DNA of 64,000 nt, taken from NCBI GenBank assembly GCA_907165135.1, contig OU015567.1:8246001-8310000 (forward strand), written 5' to 3'. Source of the stretch: Oikopleura dioica. Its lineage: Eukaryota > Animalia > Chordata. Positions 3,524 through 24,248 of the stretch are shown here, piece after piece. Under the pieces are notes generated by a model, which was given only the letters and a program-made list of their open reading frames with translations, was not told the origin of the DNA and made no database searches. Position 1 is the first letter of the stretch, and each line of letters begins with the position of its first letter. The position numbers were made by a program, and so were the translations under genes.

Positions 3524-6500
3524 TCACTGGGACGCTGGTTCATATCGTGAAGAGGATTCAGAGGTTCCCGAAGCTAGAAATGCAATTTAAAAATATGGAT
3601 TTACAGCGAAGCCGTACTTGTTGAAGAAACTGTATCAGGCTCGCTAGTAGCAGCAGTGTCGAGTAGATCGTGGCCCATGTCGCAAATACGCTCGGCTGAT
3701 GCCGTTCTCATCAGCTCATAGCCTTGTGTATGGTCTAAAATGGCGATAAAAGAACGAAGAAAGGTTGCCGCTTACCATGAGAATGACCACTTGGTGCTTC
3801 GGCTAAACTCATCTTTAGCCACTTGAGACCTTCTTTTAGAGAGCGCAAGATTTCCTCGTTGTTGTAAATGGCGCGACGCACTGCGTCTTCCGAAGCCATG
3901 AGTTTGATAATGAGCTTCAGTGCTTGGTACGCGCGAGTGCCTGTGTTGGAGTTCGATAAACCCCGCACCGTCTTTATAAATTTGTTTGGGTAAAATTATA
4001 TTTCAAATCACCTTTTCGATAATACCAAGAAGGCCATTCTCATGCGCATTCCGGAGAATAAACATTATCCTAGCGTGCTGCAACGCATCATCTAAGACAC
4101 AGTAGCACGCGAGTAAATGCGTCCAGAAAGTCGGAATATCGGGCGTGTTTCCAAACACGAAATTCCAGACGATATCGTCTGCGATCAGCTTTGACATCTT
4201 TCTGTTGTTGAAGAGAATAAACTAGGCAAAATTCTCGAATCAAGAAGAATAAGGGTTAACCCTACTTTTGTGAATTCGAACGCAATATCGGTCTGTTTCT
4301 TCAATTCGGAGTCTCGGATAAGTCTGATGATAGTAGTGCAATTTGCACCTTTGTCATCTTCAAAGAGCTTCATTGCTTCGGGGTCGAAATATGGCTTCTC
4401 CATCACTTCCTCCGAATTGGGCATCTTGATATTCTTGCCATATGGGCTATTTCTAAAGATAAAAATAAAATCTTATTAGGGTAGAAAATCTTACGAAGGA
4501 TGATCTGGCATGGTGTACCGAGACATGTTGCAGTGTCTCGAGAGCGTAGCTACCAACGAATAGAGCTTCGCCATCCCGGCTGATTGCCGATAAGAACTTT
4601 GATATCTTTCCGATTGGAGGGCTAGCGAGGTCAAATTGAACAACAATCCATGGTCGATATAAATATACAAAGGCGGAGCAAGTCCCTCCTGCAGCGGGAA
4701 GCGAAGAAGCAGGTCCAGAATAAGGAAATACTGCTCGGATACATGTACATTGCTCCGGTTATCTGGGCTTGAAATTGACACGAGGTCTTGCATACAACGC
4801 TCGCGGAGCTTGCAATTTTTCTGACAACAAACAGCCAAAATCTTGGCGACAAACAGCCGGATATCCTCATTTGGACAGACAAACTAAAATAATGTAAGAC
4901 ATCGAGTTAAAAGTTCTTTCGAATACCAAATATTGACGGAGAACTTCTGGCGTGAAATACTTGAGAACGGAGTCAGCAAGATAATCGTCCGTTACCACTA
5001 GTTCTTTGATTATCGTGAGCCAGGAAATATCTTCAGTGTTTTGAAGGAAGTTGACTTTTCGATATTGCTGGTGGAGCTTCGAGGCAATGTTGACAACGAA
5101 TGACATGCCAAGGTCGAGTGCCCATTTTGCGAGTTGCTACGAGGAGTTTTGATTTACACCAAGCGATGTTTTCTGATATTTACCTTTGTTTCTTGCCGGA
5201 TACCTGTGCCCTTGTTTCCGCCATTTCTTCGCCACTCTTCTCTTATTTTCTCGTAGCTAGCGTGGACCAAATTGATGTGGAAATCGATAAATTCCTGCGA
5301 GAACATCATTCGCTGGTGCCGCATTTCAGCATTTTGCTGCTCTACTTCCTGCTTGATGTGGCTAGAAAATTAACGAAATGGAACGGACTAATCACATTTT
5401 TACGCAGTCTACCTTGGCATTGTTACTGGCATTTGGCGGCGATCGACAGCTGGTACGCAGAAACTCTCAGAAGTTGACGAGTTGACGGAAATATCAGAAA
5501 GGCCTTGGGAGAGATTCTGGATAGAGCTTTCCTCGATTGATTCGTAGAAGAGCAAATAGGCATTCCACCAGCGGCGGCCTCGGCGGGATTGATTTCTCCT
5601 CCCGTCCCAGAATTCGCCTTGATCTCCGCCAAAGCACTCACCTGCCAGCTGCTCATCGCTCAGGTCGATCTCGCTGACCTCGCAATCGTCGAATTTCAGC
5701 CACTTGGAGTTTGGCTCGGCCGTCTCTCGCACAAAAGAATAGTAGTGCCCGCCGCTTGCCTGGCCAGAATGAACAACAACGCCCTTGAGGCGATAGTTGT
5801 TCTGACTCACTTCAGTTTCGGAATTGTCAATGCCCGCTTCTGTGAATGGAGCCATGTTGAGGACGCGCGGAAACTCAAAGTAGTCGTTGAATTTGATCGA
5901 TTCCTCGCGCTCCCAGTCGTAATCGAAGCGCTTGAGTTGGATGCAAAGATACGGTGGCAGTTTTGCGATACAGAGACGCTTGATCGCTGCGACTTTCGTA
6001 TCGCAAGTTTCGCAGTAATATGAGTTCTCTCCGTCGAGAAGATCACCCTTGACAAATTGATTAAGCGACTCCTGCAGGCTGTGTTGCGAGCGAACATCGA
6101 CTGAAATTGAGGTGAATGCCTCTTCTCGCGAGTATCGATGAGGGCAGTCTTTGCAAATTTTCTGATCAGAAAACGTGCCGCCGAGAAATTCTTGAATCGC
6201 GGATGGCTCGCCATCATCCTTCATTGCTTCATCGAGGGTGTCAACGATTTGGGAATAAAACTCCATCGCGTCCTGTTGATCCCGAACATTTATGTGCTGC
6301 CCACAGAGCTTGACATGGTCCCAGAATTGCCGAGGCACGAAAAATGTCTGTTCAGAAGATGATAAGTGCCCAATTAGACGTTGGAAAATATTGAAGATTT
6401 TATATCGGTATTGCTTATCTGCAGAGTTATTTTGCCTCGACTTTGGATCAGAAAGTTGGCCAGATAAAAGAGCATTCTTCATCGGGTGAATCATGAATAA

Positions 6501-9500
6501 CTGCTGCACAACAGCATTGAGATAACAAGTGGCACCGCCATTTTTGAGCCCAACATAACCAGTTTTGCTTTTTCGCTGGCTCGTTGGAACGACATCGAAG
6601 CGTTCGAGATTTGCCTGCGAATGCCAGTTGCGCTTTAGGAGGGCGGCAAGTTGTTGGAAACTTTCCGGAATGCCCTTTGTCATTTCAACGAGTAGATTCA
6701 TTGCCGCGTGGACGGACGCTTGAGTGTCACAAAGGGGCGAGCCAAGTTTCCGGGGGGACATTGGTGTGTCACCACCTCCAGCCACGCTTTCAATAGCGCC
6801 ATTGTCACAGCCCGAGGCGCGAGCTTCGCGCATGGTCTTGCGATCCAACGGGCTAACGGGGAAGATAATTTCGTTCAGAATCTTCAGCAGTCTATCGGAT
6901 ATATGCAGCAGCTCTGTTTTTGTTAATGACTTGACAAACACTAGAGCGAGCTCAAGGTGCCCCTTGAGAAGAAACTCGTTCGCTTCTTTTGCTGCTATTC
7001 TCGCTTCGAGCCACTCTATCATATCCATGATTCGATTTTTCCCGTCAATGTAGTTTGACTCAATGTAGAACTGATCGAATAAGTCGGATGTAAAGCTGAA
7101 GATTTCCTCAGCGACTTCTGCATTCGATTCCATCATTGACCTCATGTCGTATAAATAGTTTGCAAGTTTGACAGTTGTCTCTTTGTCTGCCAGCTGATTG
7201 TTCAAATATTTTCCAGAGTAAACAACCATCAAAAACATGGATGTGGTCCTCCGGTAGTTACTGTTCTGATGAAGTAATATTGGGATCTTAGATTCGTTAG
7301 ACTCCCTCGTCCCCTAAGGTCACTTGCTTATCTAGATCGAGCTTTGCTCGGTCGCCGCCGTGTATTTCTCTCCATTCGGTAATTCTCGCAGTTCGTGAAT
7401 TAACCTCTATTTTACTCCAGCTCGAAATACAGACGTCAAAGATACTTTACTCGTTTTCTTCCTTCGTCCAGATATAGAGAGCAGGCAAACTACGCTAGAA
7501 GTGGGAGATTCAGCAGAAGCTAGGATCCCTTCAGTGGTATCAGAGTAGTCCCGTTGGAGAAAAGGTAAATTTTCCGCCATCGACAACCGAAGTTTCGCAA
7601 CTTGGACGCTGATTGGCCGTCAGCGGAGTCGAGGGGAACCGAATCACCAACCGCCACCGCGCCGCCGGAGAAACTCCACTCAGAGAATTTTCCGCGCCGC
7701 ACCACACCAACACCACCCCGAGCGAGCGCCACCACACGAGCGCCACCACGACCCACGCGCCGAAAGTCGCGCCCACGCAACCACGCACGCACGCCGGGGA
7801 AAACCTAAAATACTCAGAAAAACAGAATTCTTTCGCCACTTTTCACCAAAAATCGAGAGAAGTTTACGAAGAATCGACCCTTGGACCAGACCTTGAAATT
7901 TCGACAATCGCTGGACAGAGAAATCGTCGGGCGTTTGCGCAAAAGGCACCTCAGCTCATCATATTGCGACTTTTAGTCGCAGTATTTTCTGAGGGCCTGA
8001 AAGGTAATCCAAGGCCCATAAACCCTTACTGCCGATATATTTCGAGCTATGGCGGCGAACAAATCACTGCTAGAAACCGTCACCGAAATAAGAAGCATAA
8101 ACGATCGAGTAAACTACCTCGAAGAACAAGTGCGAAATGACGAATCACTTAAGCCAAGCCTAGAGCCCTTGATCACAGAAAGCAGAGTAAAATTAGAACA
8201 GCTCAGTACAACGCTTCTTACCTGCGAGCTCGATCAAGGAAAAGAATCTACGAATGCTACAATGAGAGAAGAAGCATGGGTGGCCACTACCTGGTCTCGT
8301 CACGTCCAAGACTTGCCGAAGCTGGACGCCGCATGCAACACATCTTTCAACACCTTCTTGGGCAGAGCCGACATTTATCACCGCGCCTACGTCCGCGACA
8401 GACCTTCACGTGAACAGCCTTTCATCGCAGCAGTGTACAGCCACTTCGACTTGAACATCGAACGCTCACTTGGAACCGAATTTCTGAATTGTCAAGACTG
8501 GAAATCGGCCAAGGCGCTGCTAGAGAAATCATTCGCCGCGAAGAGTCACTACTTACTGAAGCTAAGCGAAGTTTTCGACGTCGAATACGACCATTCGAAG
8601 CCGTTTGCACACTACACCGCCAACGTCTTGCAAAAGATGAACGAGGCGAAGCAAGCGACTTTGAACTCTTACCGACAAGAGAAGTCAGCCGACGCCGGGG
8701 TCGATGAAATATTCGACATATTCTCGACGATGATGCTGTACTTGAATCTTAGGAAAGAAGAACCAGACGTTTTCAACGCAATCCTTCCAAGCCTATCAAA
8801 AGTTTACGATATCAACGAACTCTGCCGTCTCGCCCAATCCACAAGACAGAATCGAGTTGACAGCGCGACCGTCTCCCAGCACTTCAACAGAAATAAGAAC
8901 AAAAAGAAGAAGAATGCTAAGCGCGCCAGCACCGATTCTAAGGATGGGAAAGACGATAAACAACCAGAATCCAAGAAGATTAATACGACTAAGAACGTCG
9001 AAGATTTCCAACCATTCGATGTTCACTTTTACACAGTGAAGAAGAAGCGACCAGGAAAGGCTTATTTCGCTTCGGCTACCATCATTACGGGCTCTAAAAG
9101 TTTTGACGTATCGATGGAAGTCGACAGCGGAGCCGAGTCCTCCTGTCTGTCCGCTGCTTACGTTCCCGACAAATTTCTCCAGATGCTGAAGCCCTGCCCC
9201 TTCAAGGTCACCGGTTTCAGCCCAAATATCCCCGCCGAGCAGCCGAGGGGTATCCTTCCCTGCCGCTTATCATTCAATGGTGGCCCTGCATTCTCCTTGA
9301 ATCTCACCATCATGCCAGGCAGTAAATACCCAAGTCTACTGGGCCGCGATATACTAGAGAATGCGATGACGGACAGCTTCACAGTCGACAATAAGAATCG
9401 TACTCTCTCATTTTGCTACAACGAAGCCTTCACACAAACTGAGACTCAAGTGGTGAAGCTGGACGGAGTGAAGCGGACCAAAATCAAGAAATACTTGACG

Positions 9501-12500
9501 ACTAGATCAGCGGTCAAAGACAGCGATCGGTCCCGCACTCAACCACCACGAGAAGTCCCAAAGCTGGACGCGCCGAACAAGAACGCAGCCAGGTGCCCCA
9601 TTCAGCTAGCGAAGCAAAAACTCGGAATAACCCTACCAGCAGACGCAGACCCGGGGCAAAAGAAGATGGTCGCCGAGCTGTGTTTGGAATTCGACGACAG
9701 ATTCGGCTGCGACGGTCAAAAAATGGGTGAATTCCCGTTCGAGATCGAAATCCCGACTGATGGTACGAGTCGAAACATCAGTCAACACCCGATTCCGCAA
9801 GCTTTTCATGGTCAGGTCAGCGATCACATCTCCGAACTGCTCGAAACGAAAATAATAGAAGAGATCAAAGACCAGAAAGGGTTTAACAGCCCGGTATTGC
9901 CTATTCCTAAGAAATCTGGGGAAATGCGCTTCTGCATCAACTACAAAAACAGCCTGAACAAATGCCTCTCCGACAAATCCGACCCTTACCATCTCCCAAG
10001 CATGGAGGATACGATTGCGAACATTGGACCGGGCAATAAGTTTTTCGCCACAGTTGATCTACGAAGTGGATATTGGCAGTGCCCTGTAAAGAAAAGCGAC
10101 AGGTACAAGACTTCCTTCCAGTGGGGTGGGAAATCTTACGCCTTCTGCAGACTACCATTCGGTTATCGATGCTCGGGGAATATATTCTCGCGCGTCGTAA
10201 ACACAATTCTCGACTCAAGCCCCACCAGGAAAAAGATGCTTTCTTATATCGATGACATAGTGTGTTTTGGGAAGACTTTCAGCTGCTATTACAACACTCT
10301 CCGAAACCTATTCATCGCGCTCCGCAAGTTTAACGCTAAACTCAAGGGCGAAAAGTGCTCTTTCCTACAATCCGAAGCTCACTTTTTGGGCCGAATCATC
10401 AACGAAGATGGAATCAAACCGGACCCTGCGCAAGTCTCCGCTCTTCGTCAGATGAAACCCCCACGCTCCCAAAAGGAGTTAGCTTCATTAATCGGGTCAT
10501 TGAATTGGATCCGAGGTTTTCTAGAAACGAAAATGGGCGAAGCTATTTCATCCGGTTGCTTCTCGAGCAGAATGAAGCCCATAAACGATGTTCGAAATTC
10601 GGCGAACGAAACAAATTGTTTCAAGTGGACCAAAGAAGCGGATTTGGCGCTCAAGGAAATTCAACGACGACTCTCCGAGACTCCAGTCATAAGTTTTCCT
10701 AACTTTGACGAGTCTTTTCATCTCTACACAGACGCGAGCCTGTACGCAGCGGGTGGCGTCCTGCTACAAGAGTATGGCGGGAGAGTGCACCTAGTAAGCG
10801 CGATTTCCCACACCTTCAACAAAGCTGAAAGAAAATGGAACACTTCAGAAAAGGAAATGTTTAGCATTGTCTGGTGCTGCGAGCGACTGGAAAAGCTCCT
10901 GAAAGGTAGATTCTTTCAGATTCACACAGACCACCGATCTTTGATCTTCCTACACAAAAAGAAGTTCAAGAATTCTAAAATAAGCCGATGGCAAAGCCGA
11001 TTGGAAGAATTCGATTTTCACATTGTCTACATCAAGGGATCAGAAAATCAATTCGCCGACTTTATGAGCCGCAGACCTGGCGAGGACGACAAATCACTTG
11101 GATACGACTCTGAGTTTCCCGTTGGTCGCGAGTACGAAATCGACAAGAATTCACCAGTACGTGTCTTCGTCCCTTTCTGGAACGAAAATCAGTTTCCGGA
11201 GAAAATCACTTTATCAGAGGTGAAGATACATAAGGTAAACGTCAAGGCTATCGCGGCGCCAATGGAGATTCCGTTGGTGTCAGCGAATTATAATAACATT
11301 CTGGACTATCAAAGGGAGGACTCTGCTCTGAGTGCAATCATCACTTTTCTGGAATCTGGTAAGGAGCCACTGGACATAAAATCGCTGGTGAAGGACTCCG
11401 ACCACCGACAATCGTCTCTACTCAAGATGGAAAAAGCTCTGTTCCTGGATAACACTACCGGGTGCTTGATGTGTCAATTCAAATCTGGCGCGCGGGCGGT
11501 GGTACCGGAAGCGGTAAAAAGTCACTTTCTCTTTCTAGCTCACGACTTGTCCGGTCATCTGGGCGAGCCGCGGACTTTAGAGCGATTAGAGGACGTTTGG
11601 TGGCCTTCATTTCAAGACGATGTTTCTAACTACGTCCACAGCTGCGTCCCTTGCCTACGCAGAAAAGGATCTGCTGGAACTCGTACCAAACCGCCACTTG
11701 GAACCCTTCGTCGTGGAAAAACAGCTGGCGAATCGATTCAGATCGATTTCGCTTGTATGCCTCCCGCTGGCGGATTCAAGTATTATTTGGTGGTGGCGGA
11801 CACTTTCTCTCGCTACACTTGGTGCATTCCGACGCGGTCCGACACTGCTATCTGCGCTGCAAAAGCGCTCATCTACAAGGTCTTCCTTCCCATGGATTTC
11901 TTGCCGAAACATCTACACAGTGACAGAGGTACCCACTTCTGCGCAAGCGTGATTGACGAAATGTGTAAGCTTAACCAGATAAAACATACAATAAGTACCG
12001 CATTTCACCCTCAATCAAACGCTTTCGCAGAAAGAGCGAATCGGACTATCAAAAACAGTCTATTCTGCATGGTCAACTCATCTTCCGGTCGAAAAACTTG
12101 GGCCGACTGCGTTCCCCACGTGATGCGCGCGCTCAATAGTGTGAAAAACAAAAGCACGAAAATTTCACCGCGAGAAGTTTGGTTTGGCCGAAAAAGTACT
12201 TTCACCCACTCTACTGGCGCAGAAATGACAGCGGAAACACCTCAGGTGTTTGGTCTCAATGTGGGAGCTTTAGCGAAATCGGCGGAAGCCATTGTGAAAA
12301 CTGCGATGGAAGCTGCTGACCGAGCCATGGAGCACAGGCTGAAAAACGAGCCTAAGCCGAGACCAATCCCCGCTGGCGCTGTCGTGTACATTAAGCGAGA
12401 AAACCTGACCGACGCTAAAAGCAAGAAGGAACGCTGGGTAGGTCCCCTGAAAGCCGTTTCGAGCAACGACTGGGTCGTCATGGTCGAAGATAAAAAAGGA

Positions 12501-15500
12501 CAACGTGATTTCATCCATCGAGAACACGTGGTTCACGCCGCAGAACGAAATCACGACTTACGCTGGATTGATTACTACGAGGCCGAGTACGTATTCCCAC
12601 ATTTAACCGAAATCGTTAAGTCGAAAGTCCCACAAAAATCGCCTGTTCCTACTTCCAAACCGATGGAAAAGTCCGGGTCGAAGTCGCATGGGGGGAGGAA
12701 ATCTTCTCAGGTCGCGTCGACTCCGATGGTTGCTATGGAAAAACCGCCAAGATCATCTCTATCACCTATTTTGGAAAGTAGACGCCGATTGGACATGGAA
12801 AATCTGGGAGATACAACCGCTACATCTATTTTGGACTCGTCGGTAGCTCCAGCCGAGCCGTCAGATCGCTGGTACTCTGGTGGTACTCTTTATGAAACTG
12901 CCGAGGACATGTCAGCTGATGCTACAGTGATTTCGGAGGTTGCTGCGCCCGACAATAGCCATATGTCAGTCGATAAACAAAATTCAACAGTAGTTGAGGG
13001 CTCAGCAACTGAAAACAGCAAGAAAAGAACCCGTCCAAAGTCTTCACCAGATCGTCAATACTCAGCCGGCGCCGATCCGAATGCGACTTTAACCGAAGTT
13101 GGAGCAGCTCATCTCCCGAAACATACAAAACGAGCACACCGTGAAACGAGGCCCGTCGAACCTCTAAACATCGGCACAAACTCGGGTCAGTCATACGACT
13201 AAGCGCAAGTACTGCCCCACTCAGGTCCCCTATTCATCGACCGGGGCCTGAAAAGGTACGGAAATTATCACAGTTTACCGTCGCCGACGTATTTTGAGTT
13301 CTTCTACATGTGCAGCTACTCCTTCATGTCATCACCGCTCGGACATCACGAAAACTTCGCATCTGATTCAAGCTTTTTCCCAAAAAAGGGTTTTTTAACG
13401 CGAATCAGACTGCCTCGACGTTTCGAACCTGCCATGTTACTCATCTTACGCTTATACTCCTGCAAAAATCACACACTTTGGCCTTAGAGGACGTTTCAGT
13501 CTCATGGGGGGTATTGGGATCTTAGATTCGTTAGACTCCCTCGTCCCCTAAGGTCACTTGCTTATCTAGATCGAGCTTTGCTCGGTCGCCGCCGTGTATT
13601 TCTCTCCATTCGGTAATTCTCGCAGTTCGTGAATTAACCTCTATTTTACTCCAGCTCGAAATACAGACGTCAAAGATACTTTACTCGTTTTCTTCCTTCG
13701 TCCAGATATAGAGAGCAGGCAAACTACGCTAGAAGTGGGAGATTCAGCAGAAGCTAGGATCCCTTCAGTAACATAACAAGAACAAACTCGAAAAACTGTT
13801 TCGTAGCTTATTATCGTTAGTTTTGAAGCTACAGATTTTGTTCGTGACCAGAAGCCATGAAAGAGACTCGAAGGCGGTTTTGTAGACTTCCTCAAACAGA
13901 GTGCTTATATATGAGTCGGTAGAGGTTTTTGACACTTTATGGCAGATTTGCCAAGTGCCTTGGATGATCGTAGGTGTCATGGAAATAAGTTGGCCCTGAA
14001 AAGTGAGTTGAAATCAAGGAGGAGTACAATATTTTTAACCTTTTGAATTGGAATATTTTCGGCCGTGCTGTAAAGATACTCGTCAAGGCATCGAAGGGTA
14101 TCCCAAATTGAAGTGTCACCGATTGACCGGACGTGAATGAGAGTGATGAACCGTTGGACCTCGGCGAGTGTTTCCAACACGTGAAGAATGATTTCTGGGC
14201 GACTAGTTTGGACAATTTTCGACTGGCTTAGATCGAGCAAATTCATTATCGCAGCTGGTCCATTGGATGCAAAGAAGAAGGCTAACACATCTCGCGTTTG
14301 TTGAGTAGGCTCTGTTGGTAGCAGTAGGCTTCGGAGCAGACAGAGATTGTACCAGTTCATGGATTGCGATTCTGAATTGAAGAAAGACTTCAAATCCTTC
14401 TTCCTCATTATTGCGATTCTGAGCGCTTTCGTATCGCCTGGTAACACCAAGACAAGCTTCATGATTGAATTTACCAAAGAATACTCGCTGATATCCAATG
14501 CCAATTCCATCAAGCCAATAATATCGGTGATGAAAGTTGGATGGTTTTCTAGCGAATCATCAGGCCTAACAGATCGTTTCCTCGCCTTTAGACGTTCCTG
14601 GACAAATCTAGCGTAGAAATTCACTTGTTCGTTTTTGGCAGAAGTTTCGAGCATCTGCTCCGATTCAAGAATGTGCTGTGAGTTTTGCTCGGGAAGAATT
14701 ATGAGGTCTTTTCTGATATCAGGAAATTGATGTTGAAGACGCTCGCTTAGATGACGAATGTTGTTATTAGAGTGCATATCAACTTTAATATTCTGTTGCT
14801 CGATTTGAACTGTATATATCTTCTTTACTCCGCGCCACGATCTCCCCAGCGCTAGATTATCTTCCTGCATTCGGTTCTGTGGAAATTCCGAGAGATAGCG
14901 TTGAAAGAGATCTACTATCCGACAGATTTTTAGGGTCACTGATGATTTATCCGCAGCTGCGTCACTTTCTTTGGATTCTTTTGCGTCCGTGATTATCTTC
15001 AGGGTATCGTGAAACGTTTTAATTCGCTGAATGCACTCTTCGAAAAAGTCATTGTGATTTTGAGCAGTGCCAGTGATGAACATATTCGTGTAGTAATTAT
15101 TAATGATATCTATCACATCTGGAGCCAGAACAGCATCACATGAGCAAAGTGTCTTCCAGAGATAATTGATGCCGTCTTGGGATGGATTTTCGCTGCCGAT
15201 GGAGCTGTCTGGTTTATTCTGGCTGGATATTGCGTTGAAGAAGTAATAGAAACAAGTTACCCCAGCAGGCGTTAGTTTTTCAGGCTCCATCGCGAGAATA
15301 TGACTGGCGAAAAAATTAAAAATACTGACAGAGTTCAAATCTGGCTCTTGGCCCATTATGCTTTTGAACCAAGTAAAGCCGAGTTCTCGCATTTCTGGAT
15401 CGCCAGGGACAACAAGTTTTTCCCAAACCGCCACTGCATCTTTGTATTCAAGGTACAGCCGTGCTTCTTGAAGAATGTATTTGATAAACGATAGACGTAA

Positions 15501-17596
15501 GCTAATCTCGGTCAAATGACCGTGAATCGTTTTCGGTCGAGTTTCTTGGGAACTTGTGAATTTGATCATGTCCGAAATCACAGCGTGAATCAATTGCTCA
15601 TTATTCTGCAGGTCTTCTAGCGCTCGCTTGCGTGTCATCCCGACTGTATAGTTGTCATCAGGGAGATCATTTCCAATTAGCTCAATCAATTTAATCACAG
15701 GGATCGTCAAGTCCGGATTTTGCTTGAACTCCGCGGCCAACTTCGAAAGCCACCTTATCTTCCTCTTGTCTCGATCAACCGATCTGTTGTCCAAAATTTT
15801 TACAAGATTCTGAAGCGTGTCATTGAGTATTTCCTCGCTGACATCGACACCCGTGGCCATTCCCCACAGAAGATCGAGAATTTTGTCACCGATTCTAGGA
15901 TCTTCAGCCAGCCGTTTGACCAGGGATAGGAGTTGCTCGCGGTCCTTTTTGGAGGCGTCAGAAGCGAGCCACATGTTTCGGAATTTGTCGAGAAGATAGC
16001 CGAGAAGGTTATCGGATAATTTATCGGCGATGGAGGCGAACAAGTCATCGATGTTGAGGATGATGGCTGGGTGAGCACCGAGCTTCGCATTCCAAATCAT
16101 GTCGATGTCAGATGTTGTCAGAACATCGTGGTCCATCATGAAGATCAAGACATTGACAACGCGCTCGACATACTGTTTTAAATGGAGCGAGTCTCTGAGC
16201 ATAACTGGCAGAAGAGCTTCCTTGGTCCAATCGGCTGCTTCTTTTGCACTGAGTTTGTTACTGTCGTTATAGAACTGTTTAGTGGAATTCAATTGGGTCA
16301 TGATCTCGTTGAGCGCGAACATACGCCCATTGTAGGTGGAGAGCTTGAGCACGCGGTGGAGGAGGTTAAAGTGCTCCAGTTGAAGGGATTTCTGCGAGGC
16401 GCCGAAATGCGCTAGAATTTTCGCAAAAGAGGTAATCACGGTGAGCGGGCCAAATGCATCAGAGCGTAGATCTAACGATTTGATTTCCTTGTCCGTCAGC
16501 GATGCGAGGTACTCGCTGAGCTTTTCTTTCATCGGTAGAAAATATTGTGCGCATGATTCCTAAATTTTTTTTAGAATTTCATGAAAACATTGAGGAGTAC
16601 TTACAGAAACGACCTTAATTGCCTCAGCGAATGTACAGAAATAAATAGGAATGAGCTCCACGTCGAGCGAGGAAAGTTGACTGTTTGCATATTGAAAGCC
16701 ACCTGAAGATCAGAAAATTTAACGTTTCTCTCTTTATCAATGTTTACCTTGTTTCCCAAAGCGCTCAATAATTTCTTGAAGAAAAACATTTTCGTTGACG
16801 CCAGTTACAAAGCGGTATTTTTCTGGAACGGTCACTACAAATACCGTTGAGTAAACATTTTTAGAGAAGAGTGGGACATTGTTCTGGCGACTCTAAGCAA
16901 ATAGAACTTCCGAATACGAAGAAAAAACTGAAAGCCGACTTGCTTACGTAAACGTTATTTCAATACACTCAGGCGTGTGATAATCGGGCATAAACAAACA
17001 AGGAAGGAAGTTCGCGAGAGAGGCCTTACCGGATTCGTACGAAGGAGGTCCGGAACGAGTACGACGCTGGTGAAAGATACTGTTAGGATTGAACAAGTGG
17101 AACATTACGGCAAGCATATTTTTATCGAGAATGTTGTTCCGCAGAATTCTAGCCAGCAAATCGACCAGCTCGAAGTTTCGCCGCTGAATGTGTGCATCGT
17201 CTTCCGGACGGCTACTGTAGAACCAGTCCCGGCTGAGGAATTGAAAAGCAGCAGAAACACATGTCTAAACAGACCCTCAAAAGGATGTTTCCCACCAAAT
17301 ATAAGATAATACATAATTGTATATAAAGGAATCTATGCCTGGAAAATATATTCAACTGCTTCTTTCGCCCTTGGCTCCCCAGTGTCAATCAGGAAGGAGG
17401 CATCTTTGAGAATGTGAGAGAGCTCTTTGTTGTCCCGATAAGCATCGACTGTCAACCGAGACTGAAGGAAACAGTTAGCTCCAGAAAGGGAAGATAGAGT
17501 TGGCACTACCTTTTGTGTCTGTGCTGTAAAATCCTGACTGCGTTTTAAGAAGTCCTCGATGTTCACTATGTCGGTTTCTATCTCATCTTTATTCAT
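3524..17596 (-). CDS. USP9X: USP9X/fat-facets-like ubiquitin-specific protease, interrupted by the LTR retrotransposon
   Basis: Catalytic motifs in ORF 5409-7238: Cys box GYVGLKNGGATCYLNAVVQQL, KRFDYDWERE..IKFNDYFEFPR, His box VVVHSGQASGGHYYSFV. N-terminal pieces (17333-17596 VVPTL, 16944-17159 FNPNSIFH, 13977-16532 STYNGRMFALNEI) follow USP9X order. ATG at 17596; inferred stop at 3524 after a 44-nt GT-AG intron. Some motifs are USP24-like, but the DYDWERE/FNDYFEFP block favours USP9. Confidence 0.85.
7278..7533 (+). repeat. 5' LTR
   Basis: tattgggatc...gatcccttca; no mismatch found against 13512-13767 when compared by eye. Confidence 0.97.
7535..7545 (+). promoter_or_regulatory. Primer-binding site TGGTATCAGAG (initiator-Met-tRNA-like)
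   Basis: Begins 1 nt after the LTR-terminal CA with TGG, the complement of the tRNA CCA end. Confidence 0.85.
8049..13202 (+). CDS. Gag-Pol polyprotein (1717 aa): gag, aspartic protease, reverse transcriptase, RNase H, integrase, low-complexity tail
   Basis: Protease VDSGA; RT LPFG and YIDD; RNase H LYTDAS, EKEM, TDHRSL, ADFMSR; integrase HDLSGH...CVPC, QIDF, SDRG, AERANRTIK and GPY/F-like WVGP. No internal stop or frameshift. Confidence 0.97.
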   Translation: MAANKSLLETVTEIRSINDRVNYLEEQVRNDESLKPSLEPLITESRVKLEQLSTTLLTCELDQGKESTNATMREEAWVATTWSRHVQDLPKLDAACNTSFNTFLGRADIYHRAYVRDRPSREQPFIAAVYSHFDLNIERSLGTEFLNCQDWKSAKALLEKSFAAKSHYLLKLSEVFDVEYDHSKPFAHYTANVLQKMNEAKQATLNSYRQEKSADAGVDEIFDIFSTMMLYLNLRKEEPDVFNAILPSLSKVYDINELCRLAQSTRQNRVDSATVSQHFNRNKNKKKKNAKRASTDSKDGKDDKQPESKKINTTKNVEDFQPFDVHFYTVKKKRPGKAYFASATIITGSKSFDVSMEVDSGAESSCLSAAYVPDKFLQMLKPCPFKVTGFSPNIPAEQPRGILPCRLSFNGGPAFSLNLTIMPGSKYPSLLGRDILENAMTDSFTVDNKNRTLSFCYNEAFTQTETQVVKLDGVKRTKIKKYLTTRSAVKDSDRSRTQPPREVPKLDAPNKNAARCPIQLAKQKLGITLPADADPGQKKMVAELCLEFDDRFGCDGQKMGEFPFEIEIPTDGTSRNISQHPIPQAFHGQVSDHISELLETKIIEEIKDQKGFNSPVLPIPKKSGEMRFCINYKNSLNKCLSDKSDPYHLPSMEDTIANIGPGNKFFATVDLRSGYWQCPVKKSDRYKTSFQWGGKSYAFCRLPFGYRCSGNIFSRVVNTILDSSPTRKKMLSYIDDIVCFGKTFSCYYNTLRNLFIALRKFNAKLKGEKCSFLQSEAHFLGRIINEDGIKPDPAQVSALRQMKPPRSQKELASLIGSLNWIRGFLETKMGEAISSGCFSSRMKPINDVRNSANETNCFKWTKEADLALKEIQRRLSETPVISFPNFDESFHLYTDASLYAAGGVLLQEYGGRVHLVSAISHTFNKAERKWNTSEKEMFSIVWCCERLEKLLKGRFFQIHTDHRSLIFLHKKKFKNSKISRWQSRLEEFDFHIVYIKGSENQFADFMSRRPGEDDKSLGYDSEFPVGREYEIDKNSPVRVFVPFWNENQFPEKITLSEVKIHKVNVKAIAAPMEIPLVSANYNNILDYQREDSALSAIITFLESGKEPLDIKSLVKDSDHRQSSLLKMEKALFLDNTTGCLMCQFKSGARAVVPEAVKSHFLFLAHDLSGHLGEPRTLERLEDVWWPSFQDDVSNYVHSCVPCLRRKGSAGTRTKPPLGTLRRGKTAGESIQIDFACMPPAGGFKYYLVVADTFSRYTWCIPTRSDTAICAAKALIYKVFLPMDFLPKHLHSDRGTHFCASVIDEMCKLNQIKHTISTAFHPQSNAFAERANRTIKNSLFCMVNSSSGRKTWADCVPHVMRALNSVKNKSTKISPREVWFGRKSTFTHSTGAEMTAETPQVFGLNVGALAKSAEAIVKTAMEAADRAMEHRLKNEPKPRPIPAGAVVYIKRENLTDAKSKKERWVGPLKAVSSNDWVVMVEDKKGQRDFIHREHVVHAAERNHDLRWIDYYEAEYVFPHLTEIVKSKVPQKSPVPTSKPMEKSGSKSHGGRKSSQVASTPMVAMEKPPRSSLSPILESRRRLDMENLGDTTATSILDSSVAPAEPSDRWYSGGTLYETAEDMSADATVISEVAAPDNSHMSVDKQNSTVVEGSATENSKKRTRPKSSPDRQYSAGADPNATLTEVGAAHLPKHTKRAHRETRPVEPLNIGTNSGQSYD
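13506..13511 (+). promoter_or_regulatory. Short polypurine tract (G6)
   Basis: gggggg immediately 5' of the 3' LTR. Confidence 0.7.
13512..13767 (+). repeat. 3' LTR
   Basis: Identical copy of 7278-7533, followed by the GTAA duplication. Confidence 0.97.
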
Positions 17597-17786: not shown

Positions 17787-19370
17787 TTATGCTTTGAGGG
17801 CGTGGATCATTTCTTCTTTTTGAATGCAGTGGCAGGCTTTGTTGATGAGGTCCATAAGAGTTTCAACCGTGTTCGACCACTCGTTCAGCCGCTCAGACGG
17901 GAGCTTCTTCGCTTCAAAGCTAGTGATGCCAGAGAGTCGATCTAAAAATATCCAATTGGAATCATGGAATCGTGTGTGTCTTACCAATTCGTGCCCAAAC
18001 AGCTCCTTTTACGACCATATCTGACAAGTGTCGTTCAGCATCATCAAGTGAGAGATCAAGATGCTCTGCCATTCGCTGCGTGCGGATTCTAGTGTACGCT
18101 TTTGAAATGACTCGGATGTTGTGCTCGATACATCTGTTGTGCAAATCCTTCCATCGGTTTTCGCCAGCTTCGGACTAAAACAAGTGTTACGCGAAGTTTT
18201 TGATATGGGGTTTGGTTACCTGATCAAAGATAGAGCCAACGATTCCGTTTCGAAGCTCCTTTGTAAAATCATTTCGCAAGACGGACCATTTCATGATTTC
18301 GGGCGTGAGGAAGTTTTCCAAAAGCGTCTTGTAAATAGGGAGGTCGTTCATTGCTTTCATTTGTTTGATCGTGTTCAGCAAGCTCTGCTGTTCGGGTCCA
18401 ATGTCAGCGAGGATGGAAAAACGGCAGCGGAAGCGAGGGCCTCTGTGAACTAAAAATCATGATAAAATCAATGGGGAGTTTCTGGTCTTACATGATTCTT
18501 CTCGTCTTTAATGAGTTGGGTTTCGGTCAAATGGATGAAATGTCGCGCAATATCGAGATACTTCTTGTCGCCCATGCAGACCTCAATCATGAGCTTGTAG
18601 TATTTGATCTTCAGCTTCTGGACTTCCTCCTTTTCGGCCTCTTTGCCGGCAAAATAGCGGGTCGAGATCTTCTTGGAAATGATTTGCGAGCGGACAAAGT
18701 CCTTGTCAGCGATTGTCATTCGCATCTGCTCCAAAATGAAAGCGACCTTCTCTTGTCGCTCCATGGAGCCATAAGTTTCAACTTGGAGCTCGTTGATAAT
18801 CTTGGCCGCATCGGAGATCTGTCCTTTTGCTTCGCGAAGAGTTGCGAGCTTGAGTGTCAATCGAGCGCGCTCAACTTCAACGTAGATTTTTCCGTCAGTC
18901 TGATTGCGGAGGCAGTCAATGAGTGACATTTTTGGCTCGTTGAGGGATGGAACTGCGTCCATTTCAGTGACGAATTCGCAACATCGCTGCACCATCTTTG
19001 TGATGGCCATTTTTATCAAAGATCGTCGCTGTAATTAGCTTTTTGAATGGTGAAGAATAAACTTGAATTTACCTTTGTTAGGGCAATTATCTGATCATTA
19101 AGGTCGTTCCATGCTTTAGCAGTGTAGCAAATGTTCACAATGCAAACCAAAATCTTTGACAAAGAGTTAGCATCTTGATTGACCCGGCAATTCTTTTCCA
19201 AAGTCATCAGACTGTCCACAGCTTGCATATGATCCTAAAGTATTTTAATCAAAAACAGTCAACTTTTAGTGGCTGTCTCTTACTCCTTTAGCGATTTCAT
19301 ATGCCTTCTCGATTTTCTCTGCGGCCTCGACCGAGTAATCGACGATCATTTTCGTCTCCTCGAGGGACAT
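17787..19370 (-). CDS. PSMD12: 26S proteasome non-ATPase regulatory subunit 12 (Rpn5)
   Basis: GKIYVEVERARLT, ELQVETYGSMER, RCIEHNIRV and a KEEMIH C-terminus. Exons join through GT-AG introns of about 42-50 nt. Confidence 0.97.
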
Positions 19371-22804: not shown

Positions 22805-24248
22805 TTACTTTCCGACGGGTACTGCGCCGGGGATTTTTCCAATGAGTCCAGTAATGTCATATCCAGTCACAGATTGGACTGTTTTCTAAAGGATTATTTG
22901 TCAAAAAATGATGGTTAAATTGATCATACCGGTAGTTCAGCAAGGAGTTTCGTTGTTTCCGCAGTCATCATTGATCCAGTTGTGTTGCTGCTTCCAATAA
23001 TTGTCAAATCGTCAACCTTTTCCAACGGCATCGAAATCGACTTGGCAATCTTTGGCAAGGCATCGAGAACAAGCTTCGTGGTCGCAGCATGGCCGTATTC
23101 TTCGTAAGCAACAGCTTTCATTGACATTTTACTAGCTTCAGCAGTACCGATCGCTTCGATAACTTGCGCTTCAGCTTTACCGATTCTTCTGAGCTTTTCG
23201 GCCTGGCCTTCTGCTTTCTTGACTTTCTGGCTTTTCGCCGCTTCTGCAAGAGTTTGGACTTTGAAGGCTTGAGCGTCGGCAGGAAGTCGAGTCTTATGAA
23301 TGAGCTCTTTTTCTTGACGCTCGATTTCAAGTTCTTCGACTTCGATTTCTCTTTGTCGCTCGATAAGATCAACACCCATGTCTTCCTGGATAATTCGCTG
23401 CTTCTCCTTCATCGCTTGGAGACTGTAGGCCAGATTTGATTCGGTCTGCGCCTTGTTCACTTCGCATGCGAAATCGGCCAATTGTGTTTCATAATTTCGG
23501 CGATAACCGTCAACTTCAGTATCATTCTTGAGGCATACATCAGCCGATGTCTTCGCTGCCTCTTGCTCCTTGATGCAAGCGTCACGATTTGCATTGGCCA
23601 TGGCAATGTCTGCTGCAGCCTTGACCTTCGCGGTTTGCTCCATGCCAATGGCATCGAGATAGCCTTGGTTGTCCATGAGGTCTTTGATCGTGAAGCTGAG
23701 AATTTTTATTCCCATTTTGGAGACATCTGTGGCCGCTACAGCGCGGACATTGGCCGCGAAAGATTCTCGATCTTGGTAAAGCTCTTCCACATCCATCGTA
23801 CCGCAAATCGCTCGAAGATGACCTAAAGACCGAATATCGAGGGAATATATGATGGGTTTTAATTTTACCTTCGAATGTTTCAAGCAGTTGTTCTTGAATT
23901 TCGTAGTCAGCCTTCCCAAGGAACTGTTCACAAGCGATCTGCAGATAGACATCATCGTCAGTCATGACTTTCACTTGGGCGACTCCAGTTACCGTAATCG
24001 GTACGCCTCTCTTTGTCTCACAGTTGGTGACTTTCGGGAGGAGGGTCATTACTTCCAGAGAAATTTTCTGCGCTTCCGATACCAGCATCCAGGCCCATCC
24101 CCATCCACCTTCTGTTCAAATAGACATTTAGCAAACGAACGAACGCAAAGAAAAATAACTTACTAATGTACCGCTTATTCCCACTGCCGCCGCAGCCACC
24201 GGAAATAACGATGGCTTCGTTTGGGCCCGCTACGTGTACATTGCCCAT
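22805..24248 (-). CDS. FLOT2: Flotillin-2/reggie-1 paralog A
   Basis: MGN..GPNEAIVISGGC, SLEVMTL, ACEQFLGK, GHLRAI, ILSFTIKD and LLAELP; three introns. Confidence 0.93.

What the first reader, a model, noticed from the sequence alone, without database searches (positions are those of the whole stretch)
7274..13771. Very young, intact retrotransposon inserted into a coding exon of the USP9X-like gene
Seen: identical LTRs, an uninterrupted gag-pol ORF and a perfect GTAA duplication. Removing the element and one duplication copy restores KQFFEFVLVM|LLHQNSNYRRTTSMFLM, which aligns with USP9X [29 protein letters not shown]. The insertion is therefore exonic and upstream of the catalytic domain. 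Established: USP9X/faf is a conserved developmental deubiquitinase. Inference: this is a recent, probably heterozygous or rare allele from an active family, and a likely loss of function unless spliced out.
Basis: partly seen in the sequence, partly recalled or inferred. Interest (0 to 1): 0.75.

Follow-up and report, generated by a model that had tools for sequence, protein, structure and literature searches.

The report
Young retrotransposon breaking a deubiquitinase exon
A freshly inserted, intact Ty3/gypsy-type (Tor-like) jumping gene sits inside a protein-coding exon of the only USP9X-like deubiquitinase gene in the Okinawa Oikopleura dioica reference genome. It is most likely a rare gene-breaking allele carried on one chromosome copy of the sequenced male, which is real but ordinary for this species.

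Summary
Two identical 256-bp LTRs (7278-7533, 13512-13767) flank one open 1717-aa gag-pol frame and are bounded by a GTAA duplication. Domain order is protease, RT, RNase H, integrase, so this is Ty3/gypsy type, with no env.

The genome is O. dioica OKI2018_I69, chromosome 2, an autosome. It came from one male with about 3.6% heterozygosity, and the haplotypes were merged.

The family has at least 43 copies. All 13 other full-length copies I fetched have identical LTR pairs and their own 4-bp duplications.

The host gene runs on the minus strand and is single-copy, with USP9X-type ARM repeats upstream and the USP catalytic domain downstream. The element lies antisense, 28 nt into an exon. In the inserted allele the frame stops five codons into the LTR, so the catalytic domain is lost. 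The public annotation starts its downstream model 45 codons past the insertion.

Exonic placement is well supported but not proven, because I saw no cDNA. Heterozygosity is inferred, not tested.

Earlier agents of this scan reported similar exon-breaking transposon alleles elsewhere in this genome (RPS29, a DRAK kinase). This insertion was not among them.

The parts
7274..7277 (.). Target-site duplication, copy 1 (GTAA)
   Evidence: 4-bp duplications in 13 of 13 other copies
7278..7533 (+). 5' LTR, 256 bp, TATT...TTCA
7535..7552 (+). Primer-binding-site-like stretch starting TGGTATCAGAG, one base after the LTR. The primer tRNA was not identified.
   Evidence: pattern searches and ARAGORN found no matching tRNA
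8049..13202 (+). Single gag-pol ORF of 1717 aa: coiled-coil Gag-like N-terminus, protease (DSG near aa 358), RT 619-782, RNase H 860-988, integrase zinc-binding and core domains 1152-1321. No env.
13506..13511 (+). G6 run directly before the 3' LTR (polypurine-tract-like)
13512..13767 (+). 3' LTR, identical to the 5' LTR
13768..13771 (.). Target-site duplication, copy 2 (GTAA)
14040..16532 (-). Host gene, large exon with USP9X-type ARM repeats. It aligns to human USP9X residues 298-918.
13996..14039 (-). Predicted 44-nt GT..AG intron
13849..13995 (-). Predicted 49-codon exon ending ...SWLL
13796..13848 (-). Predicted 53-nt GT..AG intron with a CTAAC branch-site-like motif.
13772..13795 (-). 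First 24 nt (28 nt with the duplicated TTAC at 13768-13771) of the interrupted exon, FFEFVLVM. In this allele the frame runs on into the antisense LTR and stops after LLKGS.
5415..7277 (-). Rest of the interrupted exon, starting LLHQ. It holds the USP catalytic domain with intact Cys and His boxes. The public model g6265 starts at 7145.
3527..5363 (-). Eight further exons of the public model CAG5112002.1, separated by introns of about 40-51 nt

Best explanation
A germline integration of an autonomous, env-less Ty3/gypsy (Tor-like) LTR retrotransposon. Its integrase made a 4-bp staggered cut in the third-from-last mapped exon upstream of the USP catalytic domain. The host is the single USP9X/faf-like deubiquitinase gene on chromosome 2 of Oikopleura dioica (Okinawa lineage).

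The element lies antisense to the gene, 28 nt downstream of the exon's acceptor site. A transcript reading through it meets a stop five codons into the LTR. The allele should therefore encode only the N-terminal ARM-repeat part and no protease domain, making it a loss-of-function allele.

The insertion is too young to carry a single LTR difference. It is most likely present on only one of the two chromosome-2 copies of the sequenced male, and was kept when the two haplotypes were merged into one reference.

Shown: the anatomy of the element, the duplication, the family's copy number and youth, the identity and single-copy status of the host gene, the premature stop, and the split public annotation.

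Inferred: that the site is coding in the empty allele, that the insertion is heterozygous and rare, and that function is lost.
For: Element
- Identical LTRs, GTAA duplication and an open 1717-aa ORF with PR-RT-RH-INT order.

Family
- At least 42 LTR matches at 99-100% (84 candidates).
- At least 43 copies of a 601-bp RT segment, 27 of them at 99% or more.
- 13 of 13 fetched full-length copies have 0 LTR mismatches and a private 4-bp duplication. They are 98.7-99.9% identical to this copy.

Genome
- 64,281,565 bases in 19 contigs. The window's contig is 16,158,756 bases, which equals chr 2 of OKI2018_I69 (PMC8008620).
- NCBI protein CAG5112002.1, named OKI2018_I69.chr2.g6265, maps at 100% to 7145-3527.

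Host gene
- ARM_UBP24_USP9X-Y match at 4.9e-80 and UCH at 4.6e-58.
- Human USP9X structure 7yxx matched at 7e-76 and 4e-114, colinearly.
- Single copy, and no empty-site duplicate in the assembly.

Exonic placement
- The frame is open from the site into the catalytic domain.
- The proximal acceptor gives a 53-nt intron, close to the 40-51 nt of eight annotated introns of this gene.
- With that acceptor, the Trp in the preceding exon lies exactly 27 residues before FLM, as in eight metazoan homologues.
- A diverged relative (about 52% identity) has ORFs starting MLFHS and MQMLFHS, matching the window's M|LLHQ across the insertion point.

Premature stop.

Prior knowledge: Tor insertions in O. 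dioica have 4-5 bp duplications, are hemizygous, occur in under 5% of animals, and none was found homozygous (PMC4402516).
Against: - No cDNA or read data were available, so neither the exon B-C junction nor zygosity was observed.
- Profile homology to other USP9X proteins is not significant in the 44 codons next to the site.
- A second in-frame acceptor lies 12 nt downstream of the site. If it were the natural acceptor, the site would be intronic.
- The LTR starts with TA, not the canonical TG.
- The primer tRNA was not found.
Confidence: 0.8

Rival explanations
1. The insertion is real, but in the empty allele the site is intronic. The natural acceptor would be the CAG at about 7266, 12 nt past the site, giving an 89-nt intron. 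The element would then sit in an intron and might be spliced out with it.
For: That acceptor is in frame with the upstream exon (sequence). Homology to other USP9X proteins is not significant across the site.
Against: - An 89-nt intron would be about twice as long as the ten other introns seen in this gene, which are 40-53 nt.
- It would remove 12 residues and break the Trp-to-FLM spacing shared with eight homologues.
- A diverged relative keeps M-L-F-H-S in frame across the point.
Confidence: 0.1
2. The insertion is homozygous or fixed in the Okinawan stock and is tolerated. Splicing would go from the upstream donor (13848) to the cryptic acceptor just past the element, removing it as a roughly 6.6-kb intron. 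The cost would be a 12-residue in-frame deletion, that is, an intron being born.
For: The donor and the cryptic acceptor are in phase. The rest of the gene is intact, with both catalytic boxes.
Against: - Zero LTR differences against 3.6% heterozygosity implies an age far below the neutral fixation time.
- No homozygous Tor insertion has been reported (PMC4402516).
- This gene's introns are 40-53 nt.
- The public annotation does not bridge the element.
- Earlier agents found that two similar exon insertions in this genome were private alleles (not checked by me).
Confidence: 0.05
3. Assembly artefact: a repeat-induced mis-join or a somatic or chimeric long read put a family copy into the gene.
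For: The assembly is Nanopore-based, the family has over 40 near-identical copies, and recurrent homopolymer errors are visible in other copies.
Against: A mis-join would not create a perfect 4-bp duplication whose removal restores one continuous reading frame of a single-copy gene. The copy is also distinct from all 13 others compared, with at least 6 substitutions.
Confidence: 0.03

Closest known systems
Tor elements (Ty3/gypsy Oikopleura retrotransposons; Henriet et al. 2015, PMC4402516)
   Same: Same host species. It shares the Ty3/gypsy domain order, near-identical LTRs, intact ORFs and a 4-bp duplication (Tor: 4 or 5), and it belongs to a family of many young copies. Env-less members are reported among Tor groups.
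   Different: Placement in Tor1-Tor4b was not tested. This copy has no env and a single fused gag-pol frame. Its copy number here (at least 43) is higher than the 'small number of insertions per individual' described for the three Bergen elements that were studied.
Gene-disrupting LTR-retrotransposon alleles, such as spontaneous gypsy or copia insertion mutants in Drosophila (general knowledge)
   Same: An LTR element inside a transcription unit causes truncation or loss of function.
   Different: Here the element is in coding sequence of a very compact genome, and its effect on RNA has not been observed.
USP9X / fat facets (faf) deubiquitinases (human USP9X structure 7yxx)
   Same: ARM-repeat N-terminal region and USP catalytic domain are colinear with human residues 298-918 and 1502-2007. 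The Cys and His boxes are conserved.
   Different: The linker region around the insertion is highly diverged and shorter. Orthology to USP9X rather than USP24 was not tested by a tree. It is the only gene of this type in the assembly.

Membership tests
LTR retrotransposon, Ty3/gypsy (Metaviridae) type | Two direct long terminal repeats bounding the element | tested here: met
   256-bp LTRs, 100% identical
LTR retrotransposon, Ty3/gypsy (Metaviridae) type | Short target-site duplication made by integrase | tested here: met
   GTAA on both sides; 4 bp in 13 of 13 other copies
LTR retrotransposon, Ty3/gypsy (Metaviridae) type | Pol domain order protease, RT, RNase H, integrase | tested here: met
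   RVT_1 at 619-782, RT_RNaseH at 885-988, Integrase_H2C2 and rve at 1152-1321. Protease is weak (E 0.016) around a DSG motif.
LTR retrotransposon, Ty3/gypsy (Metaviridae) type | LTR termini 5'-TG...CA-3' | tested here: not met
   The 3' end is CA but the 5' end is TA (TATT...). All 14 copies share these ends. This is a variant terminus and does not argue against the class.
LTR retrotransposon, Ty3/gypsy (Metaviridae) type | Primer-binding site complementary to a host tRNA 3' end | tested here: inconclusive
   A TGG-initiated stretch lies 1 nt after the LTR. No tRNA gene with a matching acceptor end was found.
Tor elements of Oikopleura dioica | Pol groups with Tor1-Tor4b in a phylogeny | not tested
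Tor elements of Oikopleura dioica | Host is O. dioica; young copies with 4-5 bp duplications and intact ORFs | tested here: met
Copy features.
Tor elements of Oikopleura dioica | Insertions hemizygous and at low population frequency | not testable with these tools
USP9X/faf-type deubiquitinase | USP catalytic domain with Cys and His boxes | tested here: met
   UCH at 4.6e-58; 7yxx and 5wch at about 1e-110; invariant Cys and His columns
USP9X/faf-type deubiquitinase | N-terminal USP9X/USP24-type ARM repeat region | tested here: met
   PF25010 at 4.9e-80; aligned to human USP9X 298-918
USP9X/faf-type deubiquitinase | Orthology to USP9X rather than USP24 | not tested
   FAF-named hits score better than the USP24-named one. 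No tree was built.

The most novel reading that the evidence does not exclude
The insertion is not a dead allele. Carriers would splice from the upstream donor to the in-frame cryptic acceptor just past the element, turning a 6.5-kb retrotransposon into a new giant intron of a conserved gene. That would be a caught-in-the-act case of intron gain by an LTR element in a lineage known for intron turnover.
Probability: 0.05. Interest if true: 0.6.

Novelty: new member of a known kind. Interest (0 to 1): 0.25.

Why it matters
It has three practical uses.
- It flags a defect in a widely used reference. In OKI2018_I69 the single USP9X-like gene is split by a private transposon allele, and the public model for its downstream half starts at an internal methionine. 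Orthology and expression analyses of this gene will be misled.
- It documents a family of at least 43 near-identical, apparently autonomous Ty3/gypsy copies in the Okinawan lineage.
- It adds one more case to the pattern of gene-breaking transposon alleles that the haplotype-merged reference retains.

Biologically it is what published work on Tor elements predicts: active elements, rare hemizygous insertions and strong purifying selection.

Tried and rejected
1. Copia-type reading, suggested by the TGGTATCAGAG primer site. Rejected, because the Pol order is RT, RNase H, integrase.
2. Primer tRNA. Two pattern searches of the genome for a tRNA with the matching acceptor end gave nine places; ARAGORN was run on five and found no tRNA. 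Unresolved.
3. Aligning the 175 residues next to the site to solved structures. No USP9X hit. The region is too diverged.
4. A profile of eight homologues against the three exon pieces. Only the part from 44 codons downstream is significant.
5. A word search restricted to the end of the ARM exon gave nothing. The whole ARM exon gave one distant hit. So the public model for the upstream half of the gene was not recovered.
6. A metagenome scan for relatives that would show the orthologous site gave five loci, none covering it.
8. I sent no joined protein model (exons spliced, or the two flanks joined across the element) to any search tool. The pieces were searched separately by reference. Only open-frame lengths across in-silico empty sites were computed in a script, and no sequence was printed.
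9. The large representative-protein search was not used, because the protein's identity was not in doubt.
Full report
**What is there.** A single direct-repeat pair stands out between 6500 and 14500: 7278-7535 and 13512-13769, 100% identical. Reading the junctions and comparing 13 other copies puts the true LTR at 256 bp (TATT...TTCA; 7278-7533 and 13512-13767). It is flanked by GTAA at 7274-7277 and 13768-13771.

Between the LTRs lies one open frame, 8049-13202, of 1717 aa. It carries a reverse transcriptase (619-782), RNase H (860-988) and an integrase zinc-binding and core domain (1152-1321). Upstream are a weak retroviral protease match around a DSG motif and a coiled-coil Gag-like N-terminus. 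The order PR-RT-RH-INT makes it a Ty3/gypsy-type element.

There is no room for env, because only about 310 nt separate the stop from the 3' LTR. A TGG-initiated primer-site-like stretch follows the 5' LTR after one base, and a G6 run precedes the 3' LTR. I could not find the primer tRNA.

**Which genome.** The assembly has 64,281,565 bases in 19 contigs. The window's contig is 16,158,756 bases, and other contigs are 17,092,476, 12,959,145 and 2,916,375 bases. The paper describing OKI2018_I69, the Okinawan Oikopleura dioica reference, gives 64.3 Mbp in 19 scaffolds. It gives chr 2 ending at 16,158,756 and the pseudo-autosomal region ending at 17,092,476 (PMC8008620).

The NCBI protein CAG5112002.1, named OKI2018_I69.chr2.g6265, maps at 100% to the window. 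The window is therefore chr2:8,246,001-8,310,000, on the long arm of an autosome. The same paper says the DNA came from a single male with about 3.6% heterozygosity and that haplotypes were merged with HaploMerger2.

**The family.**
- The LTR has at least 42 matches at 99-100% identity, from 84 first-look candidates.
- A 601-bp RT segment has at least 43 copies. Of these, 27 are at 99% or more and 13 are at 95%, which suggests two subfamilies.
- I fetched 13 other full-length copies. Every one has zero differences between its own LTRs and its own 4-bp duplication.
- They are 98.7-99.9% identical to the window copy. The nearest differs by 6 substitutions.
- Three others also keep the full 1717-aa frame.
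- The frame breaks in the rest are almost all plus or minus one base in homopolymer runs, recurring at the same positions in unrelated copies. That pattern looks like Nanopore consensus error rather than decay.

**The host gene.** It lies on the minus strand.
- The 851-aa ORF 13977-16532 carries the USP9X/USP24-type ARM repeat (4.9e-80). It aligns to human USP9X residues 298-918.
- The ORF below the element carries the USP catalytic domain (4.6e-58). It matches human USP9X at 4e-114, and its Cys and His boxes are intact.
- Both flanks and both protein pieces occur once in the genome. The gene is single-copy, and the assembly holds no alternative haplotype with an empty site.
- The next gene upstream, a PSMD12/CSN4-like gene at 18471-19019, is unrelated.

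**Is the site coding?** Reading the minus strand gives this structure:

| Feature | Coordinates |
|---|---|
| Large exon ends | 14040 |
| GT..AG intron, 44 nt | 13996-14039 |
| Exon of 49 codons, ending ...SWLL | 13849-13995 |
| GT..AG intron, 53 nt, with a CTAAC motif | 13796-13848 |
| Interrupted exon starts | 13795 |

The element sits after the first 28 nt of the interrupted exon.

Four things support this model.
1. The frame is open from the site for 622 codons into the catalytic domain.
2. Eight introns of the public downstream model are 40-51 nt. A 53-nt intron therefore fits, whereas the alternative acceptor 12 nt past the site would need 89 nt.
3. Eight metazoan homologues share a motif in which a Trp is followed 27 residues later by F-x-L-[IM]. 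In the window the Trp of the upstream exon lies exactly 27 residues before FLM only if the 13796 acceptor is used.
4. A diverged relative (about 52% identity, marine samples) has ORFs beginning MLFHS or MQMLFHS. These match the window's M|LLHQ across the insertion point.

Against this, profile homology to other USP9X proteins is significant only from 44 codons downstream, and I saw no cDNA. I put exonic placement at roughly 85-90%.

**Consequence.** In this allele the frame reads FFEFVLVM-LLKGS and then stops inside the antisense LTR. The product would lack the protease domain.

The public annotation does not bridge the element. Its downstream model (1089 aa) starts at an internal Met at 7145, 45 codons past the insertion.

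A donor-to-cryptic-acceptor splice (13848 to about 7266) would be in frame and would lose 12 residues. It would need a 6.6-kb intron in a gene whose introns are about 45 nt. I rate it unlikely.

**Age and zygosity (inference).** There are no differences in 256 bp between the LTRs, while two random alleles in this animal differ at about 3.6% of sites.
- With heterozygosity equal to 4Neμ, and a 95% bound of about 3/256 on LTR divergence (2μt), the age is below roughly 0.65 Ne generations.
- That is well under the mean neutral fixation time of 4Ne generations, so the insertion should still be segregating.
- Henriet et al. found that Tor insertions have 4 or 5-bp duplications, are hemizygous, are carried by under 5% of animals, and are never homozygous (PMC4402516).
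- From my own knowledge, which I did not check here, HaploMerger2 tends to keep the longer allele. That would favour retaining such insertions in the reference.

Earlier agents of this scan reported two comparable exon-breaking transposon alleles in this same genome, in RPS29 and in a DRAK-type kinase. I did not re-test those.

**Limits.**
- The one metagenome scan returned no locus covering it.
- I did not run the large representative search, because the protein's identity was not open.
- I sent no spliced or flank-joined protein model to any search tool. The pieces were searched separately by reference.

**Verdict.** The finding is real and was read essentially correctly. It is a new instance of a known phenomenon, a young Tor-type insertion allele, and not a new kind of thing. 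Its main practical value is as a warning about the reference annotation of this gene.

Noticed in passing
window 7145 (minus strand), public model CAG5112002.1: The public OKI2018_I69 gene model g6265 (1089 aa) begins at an internal Met 45 codons downstream of the insertion. In the public annotation, therefore, the downstream model holds only the C-terminal half of the USP9X-like gene. No model for the upstream half turned up in the length range searched.
   Followed up: partly
L001-L013 (other copies of the family): Almost all frame-breaking indels in other copies are plus or minus one base in homopolymer runs of 4-6, recurring at the same positions in unrelated copies. Examples are the positions equivalent to window 11516, 12368, 12690 and 13390. 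This looks like Nanopore consensus error in repeats, so many 'broken' copies may really be intact.
   Followed up: partly
L003 (G000:C5:9243888-9248936): A 5049-bp copy has an in-frame 1440-bp internal deletion. It starts at the equivalent of window 10888 and removes about 480 codons covering part of RNase H and the integrase. The copy still has identical LTRs and its own 4-bp duplication (ATCG). It either moved with help in trans or was deleted after insertion.
   Followed up: no
G000 genome-wide: The RT segment falls into two groups, 27 copies at 99-100% and 13 copies at 95%, while the LTRs of both groups are at least 99% alike. This suggests two subfamilies sharing LTRs, or recombination between them.
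   Followed up: no
G000:C1:6.0-6.3 Mb (L005, L006, L012, L013 and others): At least six copies cluster within 300 kb beside the centromeric gap of the pseudo-autosomal scaffold (gap at about 6.03 Mb per PMC8008620). Some have open frames of 200 or more codons spanning their in-silico empty sites, possibly from nesting in other elements.
   Followed up: no
L013 (G000:C1:6065677-6072185): This copy carries a 27-bp extra stretch that the alignment places at the 5' LTR / primer-site junction. The first and last 256 bp are still identical, so it is probably a small tandem duplication at the junction.
   Followed up: no
window 18471-19019 and 22927-23955, minus strand: Neighbouring genes are a PSMD12/CSN4 N-terminal domain exon (6e-56) and a flotillin / Band 7-like ORF.
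   Followed up: no
L034:533-1228 (flank of the copy at G000:C2:6447139-6453617): An aldehyde dehydrogenase exon (7e-62) lies 0.6-1.3 kb from another copy of the family, so this copy too sits next to or within a gene.
   Followed up: no
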